Below are positions 11,545-56,151 of a stretch of DNA of 64,000 nt, in pieces. Both the position numbers and the translations under genes were made by a program. The notes below the pieces were generated by a model. The model had not been told where the DNA came from, searched no databases, and saw nothing but the letters and a program-made list of their open reading frames with translations. Position 1 is the stretch's first letter, and every line of letters starts with the position of its first letter. This DNA is from Bigelowiella natans CCMP2755 (taxonomy: Eukaryota; Protista; Cercozoa): the NCBI GenBank assembly GCA_000320545.1, contig ADNK01000108.1:1-64000 (forward strand), in the 5' to 3' direction.

Positions 11545-12193
11545 CATTAGTAGGGAGAAGGAATTCCAGTCTGAGTTTATTATGCTGTAAATTAATATCA
11601 AGGATATCTTTTTGCGATTCACGCAAATAATGTGAACTATGTTCGCCAGTGCTCGCTGCGTACAATCAATATATTTTTCACACATCGACACATATTGTGG
11701 TAAGTAGATAGAAGTAATTAGTTCTTCATGCATGTGGCGATCGCATTGTGATGAGGGTGAGCCTTGCACAGCTATGAATTCAGTGCACCACTCCACGCAC
11801 ATCTCGAGCGAATTAATTGCCTTCTCGAGCTAGGCTCCTTTCAATGCACTTGTCATGCTAATAGTAGAACTTGTGAATGAAGATGCGATCTTTACATTTA
11901 GCACTTTGTTTGCGCTGTCTAGCCGTGCATTCGTTGTTACCTTGATCAAAAGAACCACGTAATACACATGCATAGACTTTCGCCACGCATGCAAATGTTA
12001 TTGTCCTAATAAACTCATACTGTGATGTGTGCGTACGCATCGTTTCGATCACAGATCGATATGAACACATGCGCACAGTTGCACTTTAGCGTGTGCGTGT
12101 GTGCGCACGCATCATGATGAATCATCGTGAAGTCTGACAGGCTGGCAGGCACATCGCGATGTCATTGCTCCATGTGTAGTAGTTTGTGGTCGG

Positions 12194-12715
12194 TCACATT
12201 GGTGACACGTTCTGCGCATTGATTGCGTCACACGTCACAATTAAGGGAAAACGCAACGGAGTGCACACAAAAGCAAGTGCCACATTGATCCTGTCTCCAC
12301 CACTGCACAAATCGGTGTCGTGTAGTCGCACGTCATTGGACGAAGACGAGCGAATGAACAATGGCACCGACTCGAGCGTCACGCGATTTTCGACAGTCAT
12401 TTTGTGCACAAGTTTGTCTCAGCGCCCTCGCACTTGCCAGAGGTCATCACTTGCTTCACAACCAACAGCAGACTTGGCACCCAGCGTGCTGAAATCAGCG
12501 CTGCTAGCCCTCTCAAGTCCGGCGAAATCACGTCCAAAGTGCACCTTCTGCAGCACGTGTGCAGCATGCACCTTGCCTGTTGTTGCATTGTCACGCACGT
12601 GCGCAATCCGGAGAACAGGCAAGTAGCCGACGATGATTGTCGAGCTTCTTGTCGAGGACACGTCGGCTGGGCTGCTCCGTCAAGAGAAAGTTTCGGATGG
12701 ATGGATTGATTTCAT
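12194..12715 (-). pseudogene. Putative relic coding sequence eroded by TA->TG/CA mutation
   Basis: One protein-like minus frame from ATG ~12715, broken by TGA stops, His/Cys-rich and nearly Tyr-free; lies head-to-head with the 13002 gene like other gene pairs. Confidence 0.35.
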
Positions 12716-13001
12716 CACGTACGCCTAAGACGTATGTGGAGAATATCCTGTGTTTCCTTCCAAAAAAACGGATCTAAATCGGATCACGGAATCTTTTAAT
12801 TTTACATAAGCGACATAAAATCGGAAGACTCTCTACGATAAAATCGCATGTTTTTTTTGTATGTTGGCCCCATAAAAACCAGAAGAAAATAAATGACGTG
12901 CTGCCCCCCTCCTCCGGAAGTTTGTTGATCACCACTTGGTAAAGAATAGCCTAGCAAGCTCATCCTCGACGCTGGTACTGGATCATAGATTGGGATTTAG
13001 T

Positions 13002-22000: not shown

Positions 22001-22276
22001 GGATTTTTGGTCGACGAGAACCTCCTCCGCTGCTGCATTGCTATTCTCGGAGCTCTCGCTGGGGAGCCCTTTCACTGAATCAGCCATTTGAAATTTGGGA
22101 GTACAGAATGAAAAAATAGCCTAGATTCTGGACGTGCGTCTGTGAAACTTTGGCCGCGTTCACGATGTTGGGTGGACACAATTTGTCCGTTGGGAGTTTT
22201 TGACTGAATTGGTTGATGAAGGTTGTCGTAAGTGACGTTTGCCACGGATTCATTCATTTTCCCGACGTTTTGCATG
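19060..22276 (-). CDS. Membrane-anchored TPR protein with C-terminal degenerate 2OG-Fe(II)-oxygenase-like region; ends approximate
   Basis: TM segment YYWVGAILCLVLGISIGCILMAF; TPR-like EVLCKLGILYEELGNYSMAV and SEAHLARLYVKAGDF; FEWWVH, ILYLDDDCGPTLLV and VYPKANKFVLFDAGINYGVLP. Confidence 0.5.
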
Positions 22277-22688
22277 TGCACCGGATGAATTCTGTTCACT
22301 GAAGCACCATGCTTGGTTGGTTCCAATCGAAGAGGTAGAAGGAGAAGGAACATGGGGGGAAAAGGAAGAGAGAAAAAGAAAAGAAAAAAGGCACGTCAAG
22401 AGACGTGTCTCTTGATGCTCCACAAGAAGAGTGCGTGCCATTGCGTGCGCATTGCAGGCAACCAAGCTGGCAACGCTGCGAGCTGCAACACACACACACA
22501 CACGCCAGAACGTGTGATGATTGTTGTGCGCGTTGTGGATTTGTTTGGTGCACGTGCAGTTGTGAAAGAGCACACGTGTGTTCAAGTGGACACGCTAGCA
22601 CGTGTGAATGCGTTGGCACGTGTGTGTCATGCGCGTGCACACACGTCAAGATGATCAAGCTAGCAAGAGACGTGTCTTTCGGCGTGTT

Positions 22689-23014
22689 TGTTGCGCGTAA
22701 GGTGTTCACAGGCCGAGGCGCTACGTGCACAAGTAGGCAGGGGGGGGGAAAGGCACGTTTGCTTCCTTTTGAAGAGTTGTGTTTATTTTTATTAAAGATT
22801 ATATTTTTATTAAATCGTGCACTGCGTAATCATTCGCGAAGCTTTCGCGAATGCCGCCGCACGTGGGGCAGCACACTTCCGGTGTGCTGCCATGAGTCCC
22901 GCCGGAACCCACGTGCCTATGCTGTATTAATATCTACGTTATCTATATTCTATATCCGCGACAACCCCTTTGTTGTCGCACGTGACTTGTGCCCGCGTAG
23001 TGGTACGCGCTACA
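22689..23014 (-). repeat. 3' LTR (326 bp)
   Basis: Identical to 28079-28404; termini TGTAGCGCGTA...TACGCGCAACA form a 10/11 inverted repeat. Confidence 0.97.
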
Positions 23015-23022
23015 CCTCCCCC
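23015..23022 (-). other. Polypurine tract
   Basis: GGGGGAGG directly before the 3' LTR on the minus strand, with a further AGGA-repeat run at ~23035-23050. Confidence 0.8.
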
Positions 23023-23065
23023 AAGTCACGTTGCTCCTTCCTTCCTTCCTTATTCCCTTAGACCT

Positions 23066-26000
23066 TCATCGCTTTCGGAACTTCACCAACCACCAGGTAA
23101 TAGATTCCTCTCTAACCTTATCTCCTTTGTCGCTTACCCAGAACTCACCTTCGTCCTTAGGTTCGTGTCCATACCAGCCCTCTGCATCAAGGTCCCCCAG
23201 GACCTTATACCAGTGCTCAAAGGGTAAGTCGGGAACAGCTAGGTAGAGTAGCTGATATTTTCCGTCCTTTATTTTCATAGCTACCCTCTCCATATTTCGT
23301 AATCCAGGGTAGCCTAGATAGACAATCTTCATGCGCCAATCGTCGTTCACCCTGACCTTATTGTTTCCATATTCCACATCGAACTTAGGTCGGGGTCCTA
23401 AACAAGGCATTGCTCGCTCCCACACAGTAGGGTTTACTTTAACATCCTCTAGGAGCTTCTCACCGATATCATAATTCTTTAGGTGACTGATGTGGCGCAA
23501 GGTGACCCTGTTCCCATCATAGATGTAGTACTGCTTCCTCCCCTTCCTCTCGGTAACCTTTGCAACGCCACCCCAGAAGGGGTCTTGTTTATTTCTCGAT
23601 CTCAGATTTACCTTGGCCCTAACATACTGTCCTTCCTTTAGAACTCGGCCATCGTACGGGACCTTCTCGTCTTCGCTCTCGGTATCGTCGTCGTTGTCGT
23701 CGCCTTCTTCCCTCTCCTTATCCTTGATACCTCCCCCAGACGTGAAGGTGTCGTTTACTAACCCTTGTATCTTGTCTGGTGTGGTGCTATTTATCCTGCT
23801 TAGGTTGGCCAAGGTGCGGTGGAGTCGCTCTACCTTGGAGTTGGACTGGGCATAGTATACAGGTGAGGCATCAATATTAGGGTGTGGTAGCTGTAGAAGA
23901 GAGGTCTCATTATCCACATGTAACTTCTTTGGTATCTTGTTTATGCTAACTTCATCAGGGATAGCCTGGAGCTCAGACTCCCAGGTACGGTAGCAGTTAG
24001 TAAGCCTCTGCTTATATAAGCCTTTGTTCTTCTTAGCAACGTTGACCTTGATAATCTTTTTAACCCAGCACTTTCCAGTGGCCACATCAACGAAGGTAAG
24101 GTAGTGATAGCCATCGTACTTATAAACATCAATTTGCACGATATCTAAGAAGTTCCTTGCTTTGATTTTCTTAGATGCACGGCTCTTGCTGGACTCCTTG
24201 GTGGCGACGCCTGCCGCCTTCAAGCTGGAGCACCTGCAGCCACGCAGGTATGTCCTTATCTCTTTTAGCTTGTAGGGCCAGTAGTAATGGTAGAGTAGAG
24301 CAGTGATATGGTTTTCTCCTACGTGTGCAGGTCCATGGGCGGTAAAGAGAAGGGCTCCCCTGGTCCGCCGTGGCACGTAGGTACGCCTAACATTATTAGT
24401 GTATACATATATCCTATCACTAAGTACCTCATGCTTGTGTTTGTATTTATCCAGGTGTTCTTGAAGGTGCTGGAGCTCCTCTGGCTCAGGCAGGAAGTCG
24501 CCGTCCTCGAAGGTAATCGCGTTAACCATAGGGGTGACCTGGGTAGGGACTTTCTTTTCGAACAGCCTGCTGAAATAGTCAGCAAGCTGCTTGTCTCCTG
24601 GTGCGTAGACCACTGTCCTCTTGTCCCTAAACTCTTCCGTGTCCGCCCTCATAGCTGCATACTCATCGTTAGGCGCTTCGAGCTTGCGGTCGATGCCTAG
24701 GAGGGGCTTGTGGTCAGTCATTAAGGTGAAGCTGGGCACCGACAGCAGGTAGTATCTTAGTTTCCTCTGCGCCTCAGTCATGGCTTTATACTCTCCTTTT
24801 GTAGGGCTGTACTTGGCCTCAGCTGCTGTGCAGGCCCTGCCCCACACCCGTATGATCTGCTGGTCTTGGGTAAGTACAGCAGCCATACCTAGCTTAGACC
24901 AGTCTGTCCATAGGGTAGCTGGTCTAGTAGTGTCTAGCTTAGCATTCAATAGGGTGTTGCTGCATAACTTTATTAGGTTATCGAAGTGGGCATCAAGGCC
25001 AGCCTTGGCCCACACCTTAGCGAAGCTGAGGCCTACAGAGTTCTCCTTCCGGTAAGCAGTAGTAAAAGCAGCTGCAGTCCTAGCGTAGGTAGGGGAGAAC
25101 CTACGTAGTATCCAAGCTGCAGTCTGCAAGAATGACTTTAACTCCTTTGCATTCTTAGGTTTAGGGGCTTGCTGTAGTGCTGCTACTTTCTCGGGGTTTG
25201 GGGTGATGCGGCCTTGCTCCAGGTAATATCCACACCACTTGATTCTTGTAGCTAGGAATGTACACTTCTGCAGTCTAATAGTAAAACCGAAGTGTGCAAA
25301 CCTAATAAATATATTTTCCAGGAGGAAGATCTGAGCGACGACTGTGTTGGTACATATTATGTCATCATCCACATACACAAACACAAACACCCACAACACA
25401 GACGCCATCCCATCATGTGTGTATGCCCTGTAGTTCTGACTACTGAACGCATCCCCTGATATGCTTAGGCCGTAAGGGAATACGACGAAGTGCCACTTCC
25501 TGTGCCTGCTGGAGAACGCGGTAATGGGGCGGGAGGTTTTGTGGATGGGTGTCTGCATGTATGATTCATTTTTATCTAGGGAAGAGTAGTATTTGTATCC
25601 TATGACGTGTTCAATAACGTCATCTATCCTTGGTGTAGGTGTCTGGATCCTCTTTATTACTCGGTTGTGGCGGATGAAGTTGTGCGCCAGGCGGAAGAAA
25701 GGGTAAGTAGGTTTCTTAGCTAGCACATGTCTCACGTTCCATGGTGAGTTGCTTGGCTCTATCTTCCCTTCCTTTGCCCATTCATTGATCTGCCACTCTA
25801 TCTTTTCCCAGTCCGCTTCCGGTCGCCTATGTTCTGGGTCATTGATGATGCACTCTTCGTATCCCTTCTTTAGCTCGATCTTTACTGGGGTAAGCTTGCT
25901 GGAGGGCTTCGTCGTCGGCTTGGTGATGTCAGAGTACTTCTCGTTTAATATTTTATTAATGTACTTTTTGCCTTTGTCGATATCCCAATCATCAGCTGGG

Positions 26001-28039
26001 GGGGTCTTGTCCAGTAGCTCCGTTATCTGTCGGATGGTCTTGCCGGGGTTCTTCTTCCGTAGCTCGGTAGGTGTAGGTAGCTTGTTGTCCGCTAGGTCCA
26101 TAAACTCTAACGCATTAACGCTTGACTCAGAGGTCCACTCGTCAAGCCGTATCATGTTCTGGCTGATGGTCCTGCCTGACTTCTTTGGCAACTTAGCAAA
26201 GTATATCTTGTGATTGTAGAATGATATGATCCCCCCTAATTTTTCTAGGGCATCCTGTCCGAGGAGTAGTTCCATGGATAAAGTCATGGCTACTCGGGTC
26301 TTGATTTGGGTCTCCGCGTCGCTGCCAGGTATCTGTAGCTTTAGCATTAGCTCACCGACGGTCTTCATGGAAGAGCTTCCGTCTGCTTGAGCATATTTAC
26401 GTTCTTTCTTAGTCACTTGATCCAATAGTCCTAACCTTCTTACTGTGCTTAGGCTTATGAAGGACTTCGGCATGCTGCCACTATCCCAAAGGGCAGGTAG
26501 TTTCTTGTAGTCTCCGTAGCTGTCTTTAACTTTAACCTTGGTCATAGCAACTTTGATAGTCCTGTTAGCGTCTTCGTCATTAATGTTGCATACTCCTAAG
26601 TTCTTTATGTCGTCTAGGGTCATGGGCTTGTCTTGGTCCTGCGTTGCTGGTACTGCTGTCTTCGTCGGCGCCTGCTTAAGGTGATCTAATATTCCGTTTA
26701 TCTGCTGCTGTATAGCATTGATACTGTTCTGCTTTTTGTTCTTATATTTATTGTTCTTCCCGTTGTTGCTGCCTTGCCATTTGCTGTTGTTATATCCTTG
26801 TCCTCTGCCTTTCTTTCTCTTTAACTTCTCGTAGTGTTCGTTGAGCTGCCTGATCGTCATCCTGGGTCGTCCTTCTTTCCTGTCTCTGCAGTCTTTAGCG
26901 GTGTGTTTCCCTTTACGTGAGCAGTATCCGCAACGTCGGTTACCTTCCCTGTCCTTGTACCAGTCTCGCTGCGGCTTAATAGCGTTAATGTTTCCTATGC
27001 CAGGTACCTTAGGGCTGGTAAACTTGCGGTCCTGCTCCTGCTCGCGTAGGGATATAGCCTGCACTGCTGCCTCCATCGTGGTGTAGCCTTTCTCCGTAAC
27101 GTAAGTGGATTCCTTTATCTTTAACTTGAACTCTTCAAACCTTGCCTGATCATCACCTGTGTTGTAATTAAAATCATGTAGTTCGTCGATCATATCCTGG
27201 AAGCGCGTGGCAAAGTCTCTAACAGGTTCTCTCTCATGCTGCATCATTGCTCTGTATTTTCTAATAGCCTGGGGTAGGGAGTTAGCATCCTGTTCATTTA
27301 CAAAAGCCTTCATTATCGCCTCAACGTCTCGTAGCCCACTAACTGTAGTGTGTATTTTCTCTAGCTGCCTGATCCGGGTCCTGCCTGTCTCGTAAAGGTC
27401 CATGGCTTGCTTTATTATAGCTAGCCATTTGAGCTTGTCGTTTTCGGTGGGGTTAGGGGTAAAGTCGCAGAGTATACTCCTAGCGTTCTTCCACCACCTC
27501 CTTGCCTCACCTCTTTTCCCGTTGTATTTCGTTATCATAACCGGTGCTGTTTTAACAGACATGAACTGGGTGTTCCGCTGTACCGGCTGCTGCTGCTTGA
27601 CGGTGCTCTGGGTCGTCCCCCGCGAGGCGCCCAGACCCCCGTCGTTCCTAAACAAAGCTGCCCACTCTGGAGGTAAGTCTGCTTCGTAATCCATGATGTC
27701 CTGCATGATAGCTGCCCAAACATCATGTGTCTGATACTTGTATTCTATCGATACTTTCAGTTTGGCGTAGTTGCTCGCCCTGGGTCGCAAGGCTCGTAAT
27801 GCCATTACGACCTTCTTGCTTTCGGCGGCCACGTCCTCGTCGTCCGCCTCGTAGAAGTTCTCCAGTGCCTCTGCTGCTGCATCTGCTTTCTTAATCCCGG
27901 GTGCTGGTCCCGGCGGTGCCTGTGGAGGTGTTCCTCCTCCTTCCTTAGCGTCCGTATCGCCCTTCCTTTCCTGTTTCTGCTCGTGCCCTTGCACGGCCTG
28001 CGAGCCAAAGTCCTGCTGTTCTTCTAGCTGCTGTGACAT
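23066..28039 (-). CDS. Gag-Pol polyprotein, 1657 aa, with an extra C-terminal methyltransferase-like domain
   Basis: Zinc knuckle CGYCSRKGKHTAKDC (~26890-26932), protease LWDSGS (DSG 26477-26485), RT YVDD (25364-25375), RNase H TDWS/TDHKPL/ADYFSR, integrase HHCC plus D-D-E. Confidence 0.97.
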   Translation of the reverse strand: MSQQLEEQQDFGSQAVQGHEQKQERKGDTDAKEGGGTPPQAPPGPAPGIKKADAAAEALENFYEADDEDVAAESKKVVMALRALRPRASNYAKLKVSIEYKYQTHDVWAAIMQDIMDYEADLPPEWAALFRNDGGLGASRGTTQSTVKQQQPVQRNTQFMSVKTAPVMITKYNGKRGEARRWWKNARSILCDFTPNPTENDKLKWLAIIKQAMDLYETGRTRIRQLEKIHTTVSGLRDVEAIMKAFVNEQDANSLPQAIRKYRAMMQHEREPVRDFATRFQDMIDELHDFNYNTGDDQARFEEFKLKIKESTYVTEKGYTTMEAAVQAISLREQEQDRKFTSPKVPGIGNINAIKPQRDWYKDREGNRRCGYCSRKGKHTAKDCRDRKEGRPRMTIRQLNEHYEKLKRKKGRGQGYNNSKWQGSNNGKNNKYKNKKQNSINAIQQQINGILDHLKQAPTKTAVPATQDQDKPMTLDDIKNLGVCNINDEDANRTIKVAMTKVKVKDSYGDYKKLPALWDSGSMPKSFISLSTVRRLGLLDQVTKKERKYAQADGSSSMKTVGELMLKLQIPGSDAETQIKTRVAMTLSMELLLGQDALEKLGGIISFYNHKIYFAKLPKKSGRTISQNMIRLDEWTSESSVNALEFMDLADNKLPTPTELRKKNPGKTIRQITELLDKTPPADDWDIDKGKKYINKILNEKYSDITKPTTKPSSKLTPVKIELKKGYEECIINDPEHRRPEADWEKIEWQINEWAKEGKIEPSNSPWNVRHVLAKKPTYPFFRLAHNFIRHNRVIKRIQTPTPRIDDVIEHVIGYKYYSSLDKNESYMQTPIHKTSRPITAFSSRHRKWHFVVFPYGLSISGDAFSSQNYRAYTHDGMASVLWVFVFVYVDDDIICTNTVVAQIFLLENIFIRFAHFGFTIRLQKCTFLATRIKWCGYYLEQGRITPNPEKVAALQQAPKPKNAKELKSFLQTAAWILRRFSPTYARTAAAFTTAYRKENSVGLSFAKVWAKAGLDAHFDNLIKLCSNTLLNAKLDTTRPATLWTDWSKLGMAAVLTQDQQIIRVWGRACTAAEAKYSPTKGEYKAMTEAQRKLRYYLLSVPSFTLMTDHKPLLGIDRKLEAPNDEYAAMRADTEEFRDKRTVVYAPGDKQLADYFSRLFEKKVPTQVTPMVNAITFEDGDFLPEPEELQHLQEHLDKYKHKHEVLSDRIYVYTNNVRRTYVPRRTRGALLFTAHGPAHVGENHITALLYHYYWPYKLKEIRTYLRGCRCSSLKAAGVATKESSKSRASKKIKARNFLDIVQIDVYKYDGYHYLTFVDVATGKCWVKKIIKVNVAKKNKGLYKQRLTNCYRTWESELQAIPDEVSINKIPKKLHVDNETSLLQLPHPNIDASPVYYAQSNSKVERLHRTLANLSRINSTTPDKIQGLVNDTFTSGGGIKDKEREEGDDNDDDTESEDEKVPYDGRVLKEGQYVRAKVNLRSRNKQDPFWGGVAKVTERKGRKQYYIYDGNRVTLRHISHLKNYDIGEKLLEDVKVNPTVWERAMPCLGPRPKFDVEYGNNKVRVNDDWRMKIVYLGYPGLRNMERVAMKIKDGKYQLLYLAVPDLPFEHWYKVLGDLDAEGWYGHEPKDEGEFWVSDKGDKVREESITWWLVKFRKR

Positions 28040-28055
28040 TGTTAGTCAAATCGTT

Positions 28056-28073
28056 TCCCGTGTGTGGAAGCCA
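28056..28073 (-). other. Primer-binding site, probably tRNA-Glu/Asp type
   Basis: TGGCTTCCACACACGGGA, 5 nt after the 5' LTR; complement ...CCCGTGTGTGGAAGCCA resembles a tRNA 3' end. Confidence 0.65.
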
Positions 28074-28078
28074 AAGGT

Positions 28079-28404
28079 TGTTGCGCGTAAGGTGTTCACA
28101 GGCCGAGGCGCTACGTGCACAAGTAGGCAGGGGGGGGGAAAGGCACGTTTGCTTCCTTTTGAAGAGTTGTGTTTATTTTTATTAAAGATTATATTTTTAT
28201 TAAATCGTGCACTGCGTAATCATTCGCGAAGCTTTCGCGAATGCCGCCGCACGTGGGGCAGCACACTTCCGGTGTGCTGCCATGAGTCCCGCCGGAACCC
28301 ACGTGCCTATGCTGTATTAATATCTACGTTATCTATATTCTATATCCGCGACAACCCCTTTGTTGTCGCACGTGACTTGTGCCCGCGTAGTGGTACGCGC
28401 TACA
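28079..28404 (-). repeat. 5' LTR (326 bp)
   Basis: Identical to 22689-23014. Confidence 0.97.
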
Positions 28405-28964
28405 TGTTTGACCAACAAGGTTGTCTCAAGGCTCTTGAAAAATGACTTGCTGTTGTGGGCAAGTGCAGTTGGTGCATTGTGCTCAAAGCCAGAAAGGCTG
28501 CAATGCTCGACAAGTGATTGCCCGGAGTGTTTTGGCGATTTTGCAATTTGCTGCCCAAACTGACTAGCTGATTGAGTTGACAAGTTGACAACAAGCATGA
28601 GCACGTGCAGTGGAAACAAAATGAAAATAGTCCGGTGGTGCATGATGTTGCACATCCAGCCTGCCAGTGCACATCGCAGTGGTTATGCACGCAATGATTT
28701 GTGCGCAGTCTCTGTCCGCCTGCTGCGCCATTGTTTTTTTGAAGCAAGAGACATTGACTTGCTGCCAACGTGCAGATGAGATGCAATCGATGCTTGCACA
28801 GCTAGACAGTCGCGTGAGTGTGAGCGTCGAGCACGAAATGCACTGCATCTTCAAACGAACAATGAAACCACAAATGCCTGTAGATGCATTTGAAATGATT
28901 CAATTGATGGTTGTGATATTGTGGAATTCAAGGCCAGAGTCGACACATCAATTTGGAGTCAGAA

Positions 28965-29425
28965 CTAAAATCGAAGTTTTCGCGGCCGACGCGTGTGCAA
29001 AACACTTCCTAAGGACACCGGAGCGATTCCAAGAGGATCAGCATCCTGGACTTTCGGCGCTGTTCGTTCTCTTTGACCATTGATGCTCCCTCCATCTGAG
29101 GGAAGAGCTACTTGTGGTTCTCTCGGCTCAAATCTTCGCCCATCACCCTCTTTCTTGTTAATTCCATTGCCACCTGCCACCTCGTCCTCACATTCTCCGT
29201 CCTGCTTTTGATGTAGCCATTCAGTGTCATTCGCCGTAATGGCCGTAGTCAAGACAGAATCGACGCCATTGTCAGAAATCTCGATGTTTTCGACGGAGTC
29301 GACGCTACTGCCCGAGTTTTTGGGATTTTCACCGTCATTGCTCTTTACCTCCCGCCTTGTGTGGAAGAAACAAATTACACATATGAATGTATGTTGTCAC
29401 GTCCACACAAACGTACACACACAAA

Positions 29426-54872: not shown

Positions 54873-55410
54873 ATTTTGACTAGGAATGTGTGCTCGAAAA
54901 TCATTGTAGATAATTATAGACACAGTATATATTATATATATGGCATTATATGTCTATTATGATATGTGGCTTGGCTTAGCTTGCAGGCTGTCTAGATCGC
55001 TGTGGCATTGCATAAACTTGCAGCTTGTGTGCACACATGATGGCACAGTGCTAGAGTGGTGCTGAGGACATTTTAGATGCTATCACTTTGGTTTCGCCAT
55101 GATGTAACTAGTGTCATCATATCAGTGTAATGCTAGCTAGCTAGTTGTTGGAAGTCAGCTACGTGCTAGTTGAACTTCCCCAAAATTGACATATTGGCAG
55201 CATGCTAGCTAGCTAGCATGAATCACAGAGAATTGCACAGCATTATCGCGCAGAATGACTTCGGCATGAAGTGACAGCTTTTTAGTCAAGTGTTAAGTGC
55301 AGGTCTTTGGTTGCGAATTGGATGTGGTAGTCGCATCATCATGATGCGCAAAATCTAAAAATGCTGTGTGTGCATGTGTGTGTTCATGTGTGTGTGTGCA
55401 TGTGTGTGTT

Positions 55411-55449
<39 letters not shown>

Positions 55450-56151
55450 ACCAGTGTGCACGTGTGTTCGCATGAAGCCCGTGCACACTCTCATTGTGTG
55501 GTCCAACACAATGAGGCATGATCACAGCAGCACGCTTTCGGCTGCAAAAGAAGGCCGAAAAGAATGAGAGTGTCGCGCGCACGGTGTCGCTCGTGTGTCA
55601 CTGAAGAAACTGCGGAGCACCTGCACGTTGTTCATTGCTGGCTAGCCAGGTTGGGATGAGTGTCACGATGCACATCACAACATCACGTCAACAGCATCAA
55701 TGCGTTGAGTCCGTTGCAACGCAGAGAAATGAAATTGTCATCTGCTTTCCTTGTCCCAACACGATCGATCAATTGATTGATTGACACATCTAGTCGTGTT
55801 CACTTCGACACCACTCCATGTCAAGACGCACACAAACCCTGCTAGCCTGCCAACAAGCTGGACGCGCCTCAAGCGGCTCGGAAAGCGGAGCGGCTAGGCA
55901 CTCAACGCAAACCGGACCGCAGAGTTGCACTTGGGCTGACGTTGGAAGTTGGAAGCTCGATCCTTGCTGCATGGGTCAAAGGCTCACAGGTGAGGATGAC
56001 CCGAACGGCAGCACCAAGTCAACTTCTGAGGCCGAAGAATGGATCTAATAATAGCAGAATGCAGGAATGCCCTGCATTTCGACTCTGCGACTTATAATGA
56101 TCACCTCATAGATAAGTGCGAAAATGAGCCAATTCACAGCATCCGTTAGGC

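What the first reader, a model, noticed from the sequence alone, without database searches (positions are those of the whole stretch)
22381..28860. The young retrotransposon landed inside a TpA-erased island: possible targeting of the modified DNA
Seen (manual counts): left flank 22381-22688 has 2 TA (both CTAG) and right flank 28405-28860 has 4 TA (2 CTAG, ATAG, TTAT). Each 326-bp LTR has about 24 TA, and the change is abrupt at the TSD. Erosion therefore predates the insertion or spares the element. Inference: the islands are gene-free safe havens, and the inactive methyltransferase-like domain could act as a reader that steers integration to the marked TpA DNA. That would make a host mark plus transposon reader system. 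One insertion cannot prove targeting.
Basis: inference. Interest (0 to 1): 0.8.

Follow-up and report, generated by a model that had tools for sequence, protein, structure and literature searches.

The report
Young retrotransposon lands in TA-erased islands
In the alga Bigelowiella natans, a very young jumping gene with about 300 near-identical copies sits mostly inside short DNA patches where an already published mutation process had erased nearly every TA, so it seems to choose (or survive only in) this dead DNA, and it carries a conserved but catalytically dead DNA-methylase-like tail that might do the choosing.

Summary
The flanks hold 2 and 4 TA against 17 and 30 expected. Each identical 326-bp LTR holds 24. 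The switch falls at a 4-bp TSD (TGTT).

The genome is Bigelowiella natans. The island carries the TpA->CpA/TpG footprint published by Mettrop et al. (2026 preprint).

Of 20 further insertions taken in contig order, 15 lie in TA-erased DNA, against 7.4% of background windows (P about 1e-13). The depletion peaks at the insertion point.

The copies are pristine. Seven of 11 full-length copies are identical, and only 2 of 38 substitutions are TpA-type. Yet one old copy (a Bigna1 gene model) is clearly hypermutated. So the family is not immune, only young.

The polyprotein's last 132 residues fold as a phage/DIRS-type Dam adenine methyltransferase. The catalytic Asn-Pro-Pro-Tyr is replaced by G-Y-P-G in all of about 50 relatives.

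Targeting is strongly supported as an association. A tether by the dead Dam-like domain, or any 'marked TpA', is untested. Survival of insertions only in junk DNA remains a rival.

This scan reached the same conclusion twice before on other DNA of this genome (s1-710577, s1-730550). I found no paper that reports it.

The parts
22001..22688 (.). Left half of the TA-erased island (core 22231-22688). Single-copy, with no recognisable coding relic.
   Evidence: rho_TA 0.11 and rho_CA+TG 1.70 in the core. Sliding-window island 22001-22725. Single copy in the genome. No Pfam hit in its ORFs.
22685..22688 (.). Target-site duplication TGTT, left copy
   Evidence: A perfect 4-bp TSD is also seen in 7 of 10 other full-length copies.
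22689..23014 (-). 3' LTR in element sense (326 bp, TG...CA), 24 TA
   Evidence: Identical to 28079-28404. 100% identical to 40 scored genomic copies. TA count.
23015..23029 (-). Polypurine tract next to the 3' LTR (...CTTGGGGGAGG in element sense). Inferred.
   Evidence: Sequence read.
23066..28039 (-). Single 1657-aa gag-PR-RT-RNaseH-integrase ORF, intact
   Evidence: ORF. Pfam domains in order: gag-asp_proteas 513-599, RVT_1 798-939, RT_RNaseH 1036-1118, Integrase_H2C2 1222-1269. Weak match to PFV integrase, E 0.0016.
23465..23665 (-). Integrase C-terminal SH3-like barrel (polyprotein residues about 1459-1525)
   Evidence: AF2 model with pLDDT 92.7. Matches PFV integrase 4bac (Z 7.9) and the MLV IN CTD 7jyz (Z 7.3).
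23069..23464 (-). Terminal 132-aa Dam-type adenine-methyltransferase-like domain. G-Y-P-G stands where Dam enzymes have N-P-P-Y.
   Evidence: AF2 pLDDT 96.2. All 50 top PDB matches are class-I methyltransferases, led by N6-adenine enzymes. Phage DNA N6-adenine methyltransferases match at E 4.6e-6, TM 0.61-0.69. ESM Atlas clusters that carry PF05869/RVT_1 match at TM 0.65-0.75. Motif survey.
28058..28078 (-). Primer-binding-site region just inside the 5' LTR (ACCTT TGGCTTCCACAC... in element sense). Inferred.
   Evidence: Sequence read.
28079..28404 (-). 5' LTR in element sense, identical to the 3' LTR
28405..28408 (.). Target-site duplication TGTT, right copy
28405..29225 (.). Right half of the TA-erased island (core 28405-28880)
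   Evidence: rho_TA 0.13 and rho_CA+TG 1.87 in the core. Sliding-window island up to 29225. Single copy in the genome. No Pfam hit.

Best explanation
The 1-1.5 kb island is a pre-existing product of the TpA->CpA/TpG hypermutation already shown experimentally in Bigelowiella natans. The element at 22689-28404 is one of about 300 almost identical copies of a very young Ty3/gypsy-like LTR retrotransposon. Its integrase places new copies, with a 4-bp duplication, preferentially into such erased and probably silenced islands. So the abrupt TA step at the TSD is simply new DNA set into old DNA. The family is not exempt from the mutator: an old copy has been hypermutated. The young copies are pristine because they are young, or because the mutator acts episodically. 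Shown here: the association, the age contrast, and the vulnerability of old copies. Inferred: that integration itself is directed rather than filtered by selection, and that the direction comes from a tether to island chromatin or DNA. The conserved, catalytically dead Dam-like domain at the very end of the integrase is the obvious but untested candidate, in the position where chromoviruses carry a chromodomain.
For: Family size and youth:
- The exact 27-mer of the LTR end occurs 627 times.
- All 40 scored LTR matches are 100% identical.
- Seven of 11 full-length copies are identical over 5716 bp.

Association with islands:
- Of the first 20 insertions in contig order (not chosen by composition), 15 have rho_TA <=0.43 in the adjacent 250 bp, against 7.4% of background windows. 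The binomial P is 1.2e-13.
- Pooled rho_TA is 0.23 at 0-100 bp and rises to 0.74 at 1.5-2.1 kb. Near the junction 52% of surviving TA are CTAG, against 5% in background.
- TA-poor runs reach a median of 371 bp from the junction, against 17 bp at random positions.
- Counted by eye on the 100 junction flanks printed: 31 TA in 1500 dinucleotide steps (2.1% against 5.6% in the window), 17 of them in CTAG.

Erosion is older than the insertion:
- Only 2 of 38 substitutions, over about 5,600 surveyed TpA sites in element DNA, are TpA->CpA/TpG, while the flanks have lost about 72% of their TA.
- The outermost TAs of the LTR, 4 and 10 bp from its ends, are intact.
- Islands are often lopsided around the insertion, for example L012 with 280 bp on the left and >2100 bp on the right.
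- The older copy L019 sits in normal DNA and its flanks are normal.
- Islands without this element exist in the same window, at 12076-12725 and 55226-56025.
- A paralogous empty site for the L018 insertion is also TA-poor and shows only 3 discordant CA/TG sites.

Not homology-driven: the flanks show no similarity to the element as DNA, as transition-collapsed DNA, or as protein, and TSDs are present.

Not a simple sequence preference: TGCA is only 2.5-fold and TG/CA only 1.4-fold denser in the islands.

The family is not immune: the gene model Bigna1/137107 (P0013) is 84% identical to the element's tail, and 17 of its 21 amino-acid differences are what single TpA->CpA/TpG changes would give.

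Candidate tether: the Dam-like fold is conserved at the C-terminus of about 40 RT-RH-IN proteins, with invariant residues.
Against: - Many of them lie on short contigs.
- The background comes from one 64-kb window plus the published 5% quantiles.
- No de novo insertions were seen, so purifying selection in a compact genome could produce part of the bias.
- Measured hypermutation is fast: about 1e-5 per TpA per generation by my arithmetic on the numbers. An island could therefore be erased within the time a copy stays free of ordinary mutations, and timing alone does not prove precedence.
- The paralogue argument depends on an assumed ancestral TA content.
- About a quarter of insertions (L001, L004, L007, L010, L019) are not in clear islands.
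- Nothing tests binding by the Dam-like domain.
- The chromatin state of the islands is unknown.
Confidence: 0.6

Rival explanations
1. Integration is random and selection does the rest. In this compact genome a 5.7-kb insertion survives only in dead DNA, and the TA-erased islands are that dead DNA.
For: The island ORFs have no recognisable domains. The islands are small and set among normal DNA. Only surviving insertions of one clone were looked at.
Against: The copies are extremely young: 7 of 11 are identical. Islands are only about 3-7% of positions yet hold 66-80% of flanks. This would require nearly all other DNA, introns and TA-normal spacers included, to be intolerant. Among the 100 junction flanks I saw by eye only one that lies in the element's own sequence, although existing copies (about 1.9% of the genome) should be neutral landing sites. 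The caveat is that nested identical repeats assemble badly.
Confidence: 0.2
2. The insertion came first. The element triggers hypermutation that spreads into its flanks while the element itself is spared.
For: The depletion peaks at the insertion point and decays over about 1 kb. Earlier notes of this scan report spill-over of the mutator from LINE relics into unique DNA (s1-706840, s1-721122; not checked here). The measured rate is high enough to erase an island quickly.
Against: The boundary would have to hold to within 4 bp at about 600 LTR ends. The family is not spared in principle. The older copy L019 has normal flanks, while identical young copies have fully erased flanks. Islands are asymmetric around insertions. 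Islands also exist without the element.
Confidence: 0.05
3. One reading: the dead methyltransferase-like domain reads a DNA mark on TpA (or on the surviving CTAG) and steers the integrase to it.
For: The domain has a Dam-type fold, lacks the catalytic motif and is conserved. It sits at the very C-terminus after the integrase SH3-like domain. CTAG is 2.3-fold and GCTAGC 5.2-fold denser next to insertions than in background.
Against: The islands hold almost no TpA to be marked. No DNA modification of these islands is known. CTAG lies within 16 nt of only about 15 of 100 junctions (by eye).
Confidence: 0.12
4. Young cDNA replaced old, hypermutated copies of the same family by homologous recombination. 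On this reading the eroded flanks are old spill-over and no targeting is needed.
For: Old hypermutated copies of the family exist. Two of 11 copies lack a TSD (L005, L011).
Against: The LTRs are pristine to their last bases, including the TAs 4 and 10 bp from the ends, and a crossover inside the LTR would not restore those. At most 25 of 652 LTR ends are variant. Eight of 11 copies have perfect TSDs.
Confidence: 0.03

Closest known systems
TpA->CpA/TpG hypermutation of foreign DNA in Bigelowiella natans (Mettrop et al., bioRxiv 10.64898/2026.01.13.699255)
   Same: [quoted passage not shown] The 1 kb around this site passes both published cut-offs.
   Different: The paper deals with a 186-kb giant-virus insert, a 25-kb virophage insert and 124 clusters of >=3 kb. 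It does not mention LTR elements, integration sites or CTAG. The islands here are about 0.5-1.5 kb.
DAM-LTR retrotransposons (Fernandez-Moreno et al., bioRxiv 10.64898/2026.05.21.726589)
   Same: A Ty3/gypsy-like element carrying a small phage/DIRS-type Dam-fold domain: a five-strand sheet with flanking helices.
   Different: That family keeps the Asn-Pro-Pro catalytic triplet. This clade has G-[YFHC]-P-G instead, in all relatives. The PF05869 model does not recognise it. Rhizaria and Bigelowiella are not among the reported lineages. The paper links DAM-LTRs to 6mA and active chromatin, not to insertion into mutated islands.
Chromoviruses (Ty3/gypsy elements with a chromodomain after the integrase) and other tethered integrations such as Ty5-Sir4. 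From established knowledge, and as summarised.
   Same: An extra module sits at the integrase C-terminus, and insertions concentrate in silent, gene-poor DNA.
   Different: The module here has a methyltransferase fold, not a chromodomain. The target is defined by a mutational footprint, and no histone mark is known.
RIP-degraded, transposon-rich compartments of fungal genomes (established knowledge; compared)
   Same: A dinucleotide-specific mutator creates degraded compartments where mobile DNA accumulates.
   Different: RIP turns CpA into TpA in repeats. Here TpA is destroyed, the erased DNA at this site is single-copy, and a still-pristine family accumulates in it.

Membership tests
Ty3/gypsy-type LTR retrotransposon | Two direct LTRs ending TG...CA, flanked by a short target-site duplication | tested here: met
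   Identical 326-bp LTRs. TGTT duplication here, and perfect 4-bp TSDs in 8 of 11 full-length copies.
Ty3/gypsy-type LTR retrotransposon | Domain order protease - RT - RNase H - integrase | tested here: met
   Pfam hits in that order. Integrase zinc domain found. SH3-like CTD matches PFV and MLV integrase. Weak PFV integrase sequence match, E 0.0016.
Ty3/gypsy-type LTR retrotransposon | Integrase catalytic core recognised by the rve model | tested here: inconclusive
   No rve hit for this protein. rve_3 is only faint (E 0.07) in 2 relatives. Candidate D, D, E residues can be read in the translation.
Eukaryotic DAM family / DAM-LTR (PF05869-type) | Dam-type fold (five-strand sheet with flanking helices) | tested here: met
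   Phage DNA N6-adenine methyltransferases match at E 4.6e-6, and a PF05869 Atlas cluster matches at TM 0.67/0.58.
Eukaryotic DAM family / DAM-LTR (PF05869-type) | Sequence match to the Pfam Dam model above its cut-off | tested here: not met
   No hit for the domain. One of 27 relatives reaches E 0.032. No PF05869 hit anywhere in the genome.
Eukaryotic DAM family / DAM-LTR (PF05869-type) | Conserved Asn-Pro-Pro(-aromatic) catalytic triplet | tested here: not met
   G-[YFHC]-P-G at the loop after the corresponding strand in all relatives. No [DNS]PP[YFWH] in the domain of any relative. That this loop corresponds to motif IV rests on fold topology and on my memory of the family, not on a residue-level superposition.
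Chromovirus | Chromodomain after the integrase | tested here: not met
   No chromodomain in Pfam. The terminal domain has a methyltransferase fold.
TpA-hypermutated region of B. natans (Mettrop criteria) | [quoted passage not shown] | tested here: met
   0.14 and 1.76 for the reconstructed empty site +-500 bp. Cut-offs.
TpA-hypermutated region of B. natans (Mettrop criteria) | Cluster of at least three consecutive such 1-kb windows | tested here: not met
   The island is about 0.9-1.5 kb. At +-1000 bp rho_TA is 0.33 but rho_CA+TG is 1.46.
TpA-hypermutated region of B. natans (Mettrop criteria) | Ongoing A/T->G/C mutation at TpA seen in mutation-accumulation lines | not testable with these tools
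   This needs the read data of the mutation-accumulation lines.

The most novel reading that the evidence does not exclude
A host mutator and a transposon module form a matched pair. The integrase's conserved, catalytically dead Dam-type domain would be a new kind of integration-targeting reader. It would bind the DNA or chromatin of TpA-erased, CTAG-rich islands and park new copies in DNA that the genome-defence mutator has already destroyed. The element would thereby exploit the footprint of the host's own defence as a safe haven.
Probability: 0.15. Interest if true: 0.8.

Novelty: new variant of a known kind. Interest (0 to 1): 0.6.

Why it matters
Targeted integration into silent DNA is known for chromoviruses and yeast Ty elements. 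The TpA mutator and Dam-carrying LTR elements were each described in 2026. Neither preprint reports what follows, and my searches of the held library for Bigelowiella or chlorarachniophyte retrotransposons found no paper on it either.

A highly active family concentrates 10-fold or more in the small islands left by that mutator. It carries a conserved, dead version of the Dam domain in the place where other elements carry their targeting module. If integration is truly directed, this would link a genome-defence mutator to transposon site choice. It would also give the widespread retrotransposon Dam domains a testable non-catalytic role.

On the practical side, several gene models in the public B. 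natans annotation are copies or chimeras of this element.

Tried and rejected
1. I planned to read the flanks of 100 insertions. I did not try to obtain them by another route.
That step was left out. The counts (TA, CTAG, TG or TGCA at the TSD, one nested case) were made by eye and are marked as such.
3. Are the islands old copies of the same element? No. Plain blastn, transition-collapsed local alignment against shuffles and tblastn with the polyprotein all found nothing.
4. Are the islands one repeat family? No. Only L005 and L018 share an older repeat, and this window's island is single-copy.
5. Is a sequence preference alone enough? No. TGCA is only 2.5-fold enriched in the islands.
6. Pfam, the feature search of the ESM Atlas and the PDB sequence search gave nothing for the terminal domain.
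7. I looked for flanks of a distant relative, P0033. Its contig holds the element only.
8. A link between the giant-virus TGCA 6mA motif and the frequent TGCA duplications was noted but not pursued.
9. cDNA recombination with old copies was rejected because the LTR termini are pristine.
Full report
**What is there**

The stretch holds a complete LTR retrotransposon on the minus strand.
- It has two identical 326-bp LTRs, at 22689-23014 and 28079-28404.
- It has a 4-bp target-site duplication, TGTT.
- It has one intact 1657-aa ORF (28039..23066). Pfam finds an aspartic protease, reverse transcriptase, RNase H and the integrase zinc domain in that order. There is a weak sequence match to foamy-virus integrase.

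Gene models of Bigelowiella natans (jgi/Bigna1) are 100% identical to its C-terminus, so the genome is that chlorarachniophyte alga.

**The observation**

- Left flank 22381-22688: 2 TA, both CTAG, against 17.2 expected.
- Right flank 28405-28860: 4 TA (2 CTAG, ATAG, TTAT) against 30 expected.
- Each LTR: 24 TA (rho 1.23). Whole element: 397 TA (rho 1.13).

With the element taken out, the 1 kb around the site has rho_TA 0.14 and rho_CA+TG 1.76. In the rest of the window, 7.4% of 250-bp windows and 0.9% of 1-kb windows reach rho_TA <=0.43. Two more such islands lie at 12076-12725 and 55226-56025, and neither contains this element.

**What the island is**

A 2026 preprint (Mettrop et al., 10.64898/2026.01.13.699255) showed by mutation accumulation that B. 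natans hypermutates certain regions. The changes are almost exclusively TpA->TpG/CpA. [quoted passage not shown]

The island here passes both cut-offs, but it is shorter than their 3-kb clusters. The paper says nothing about LTR elements, integration or CTAG, and its discussion leaves the guiding signal open.

At this site the erased DNA is single-copy. Its ORFs, which are long because TAA and TAG stop codons are gone, carry no Pfam domain.

The LTR end occurs 627 times exactly in the 91-Mb assembly. All 40 scored LTR matches are 100% identical. A junction pattern lists 224 outer junctions. The family therefore has roughly 300 copies.

I asked for the first 100 junctions in contig order with 2.1 kb on each side. 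I did not look for another way round.

These 20 were not chosen by composition. The results were as follows.
- Fifteen of the 20 have rho_TA <=0.43 in the 250 bp next to the element, against a 7.4% background. The binomial P is 1.2e-13.
- Of the 1-kb flank windows, 48% pass the published 5% cut-off.
- Pooled rho_TA is 0.23 in the first 100 bp, 0.44 at 400-500 bp and 0.74 at 1.5-2.1 kb.
- The share of surviving TA that are CTAG falls from 52% near the junction to 2% far from it.
- TA-poor runs reach a median of 371 bp from the junction, against 17 bp at random positions. The median island is about 0.9 kb, and three exceed 2 kb on one side.
- Counted by eye on the 100 sixteen-base flanks printed: 31 TA in 1500 steps (2.1%, against 5.6% in the window), 17 of them in CTAG.

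So other copies do not insert independently of the islands. Two earlier follow-ups of this scan reached the same conclusion on other DNA of this genome (s1-710577, s1-730550). My test is independent of theirs.

**Which came first**

Seven of 11 full-length copies are identical over all 5716 bp. Across about 81 kb of element DNA in the 20 loci (about 5,600 TpA sites, with some double counting of LTRs), only 2 of 38 substitutions are TpA->CpA/TpG. The adjacent 300 bp, by contrast, have 28% of the background TA density.

Several points favour an older island.
- The step is sharp to the base, and the LTR's outermost TAs, 4 and 10 bp from its ends, are intact in 627 of at most 652 LTR ends.
- Islands are often lopsided around the insertion.
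- The older copy L019 (4 substitutions) sits in normal DNA and has normal flanks, while identical young copies have erased flanks.
- L005's right flank is a paralogue of the L018 site without the insertion. It carries a single TGCA and is 89% identical over 932 bp. It is itself TA-poor (rho 0.39) and shows only 3 discordant CA/TG sites. Independent erosion of both copies would give many more. The L018 copy has 12 further private TA losses.

Timing alone is not decisive. From the paper's numbers (211 mutations, 6169 TpA, 3132 generations) I estimate about 1e-5 per TpA per generation. That rate could erase an island before a 5.7-kb copy picks up one ordinary mutation.

**The family is not immune**

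The gene model Bigna1/137107 (P0013) is 84% identical to the element's last 114 residues. Seventeen of its 21 differences are exactly what single TpA->CpA/TpG changes give: seven Tyr->His, plus Tyr->Cys, Ile->Thr and Val->Ala among others. It is an old, hypermutated copy.

So 'spares the element' is wrong as a property of the family. The young copies are simply young, or the mutator acts in episodes, as the preprint suggests. A plausible cycle, which is inferred, runs as follows. Copies land in erased DNA, are later erased themselves, and so enlarge the compartment.

**Why there**

- Homology is excluded. The flanks show no similarity to the element as DNA, as transition-collapsed DNA or as protein, and TSDs are present.
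- There is a weak palindromic target preference. By eye, 31 of 100 duplications start with TG and 8 are TGCA. But TGCA is only 2.5-fold and TG/CA only 1.4-fold denser in the islands. That is too little for an enrichment of 10-fold or more.
- Selection acting after random insertion cannot be excluded without de novo events. It would require almost all other DNA to be intolerant of very recent insertions.
- By eye, only one of 100 junction flanks lies in the element's own sequence, which should be a neutral target. This is subject to assembly bias.

I therefore favour directed integration through a tether to island chromatin or DNA.

**The terminal domain**

Residues 1440-1657 were modelled with an alignment of relatives. 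The model (pLDDT 92.7) shows the integrase SH3-like barrel, which matches PFV and MLV integrase CTDs at Z 7.3-7.9, followed by a 132-aa alpha/beta domain.

Modelled alone, this domain reaches pLDDT 96.2. Its structural matches are consistent.
- All 50 best matches in the PDB are class-I methyltransferases. The best are N6-adenine enzymes: PCIF1 at Z 7.1, KsgA at Z 6.3, and E. coli and T4 Dam at Z 5.1-5.3. These Z values are middling, but the list is uniform.
- In BFVD, phage DNA N6-adenine methyltransferases match at E 4.6e-6 to 8.6e-4, with TM 0.61-0.69.
- In the ESM Atlas, retroelement clusters that carry RVT_1 and PF05869, and a phage PF05869 cluster, match at TM 0.65-0.75.

At sequence level the Pfam Dam model does not see the domain. 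One of 27 relatives reaches E 0.032.

An exhaustive HMMER search found 53 relatives. They sit at the C-termini of RT-RNaseH-integrase proteins from B. natans (a second family, P0017), from MMETSP transcriptomes and from marine metagenomes. All have G-[YFHC]-P-G where Dam enzymes have Asn-Pro-Pro-Tyr, together with invariant Pro and Trp residues elsewhere.

A May 2026 preprint (Fernandez-Moreno et al., 10.64898/2026.05.21.726589) describes 'DAM-LTR' elements in at least four lineages. Their Asn-Pro-Pro is conserved and they are linked to 6mA-rich active chromatin. Rhizaria are not mentioned.

This clade is therefore best described as a divergent, catalytically degenerate relative of those domains. 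It is conserved, so it has some function. It sits where chromoviruses carry their targeting chromodomain. That it reads island DNA or chromatin is an inference. That it reads 'marked TpA' has no support, because the islands have almost no TpA left.

**Verdict**

The preference of this family for such islands is real, strong and, as far as I could find, unpublished. The mechanism is open.

Noticed in passing
Flanks of L001-L020 and window 22389-22688 / 28405-28704: CTAG is not only the main surviving TA context but is enriched next to insertions. It reaches 6.2 per kb against 2.7 in background; GCTAGC is 5.2-fold, GCATGC 6-fold and CACGTG 7.8-fold denser. A mutator that only destroys TA cannot create CTAG. 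CTAG may therefore be a protected, absorbing state fed by ordinary C->T changes of CCAG/CTGG, or it may be protein-bound or methylated. Unexplained.
   Followed up: partly
P0013 = jgi/Bigna1/137107 (another scaffold): A public B. natans 'gene' is a TpA-hypermutated copy of this retrotransposon's tail. All Tyr have become His or Cys, and the stop codon is read through into LTR-derived sequence.
   Followed up: yes
P0005, P0007, P0008 (Bigna1 models 86460, 86656, 72851): These gene models join 100%-identical pieces of the element's C-terminus to host-like domains (PF10520, WW PF00397, PF25427/PF18384). They are probably annotation chimeras across insertions.
   Followed up: no
L005 and L018 flanks: Two insertions lie about 360 bp apart, in homologous coordinates, in two 89%-identical copies of an older unnamed repeat. 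The L018 copy has lost 12 TA that the L005 copy keeps, which is a direct record of erosion after duplication.
   Followed up: partly
L005, L011: These two full-length copies have no matching 4-bp duplication. L005 also has 4 G->A/C->T changes in one LTR only, and a 26-bp LTR-end fragment 106 bp into its right flank. They are probably products of recombination between copies, or of older nested events.
   Followed up: no
One search list: C1247:9549-9582, and C88 / C1425: One junction flank is LTR-internal sequence, which points to a nested or rearranged copy. Two contigs carry the same junction flank, which points to duplicate contigs.
   Followed up: no
Literature versus TSDs: Giant viruses that infect B. 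natans methylate the A of TGCA (6mA). TGCA is also the commonest target-site duplication of this element (8 of 100, by eye) and is 2.5-fold enriched in the islands. This may be a coincidence.
   Followed up: no
window 12076-12725 and 55226-56025: Two further TA-erased islands (rho_TA 0.22 and 0.19; rho_CA+TG 1.63 and 1.84) contain no copy or fragment of this element.
   Followed up: partly
P0017 = jgi/Bigna1/67480: B. natans has a second, 43%-identical retroelement family with the same terminal domain (motif VFAGHPG). Its insertion sites could not be examined.
   Followed up: no
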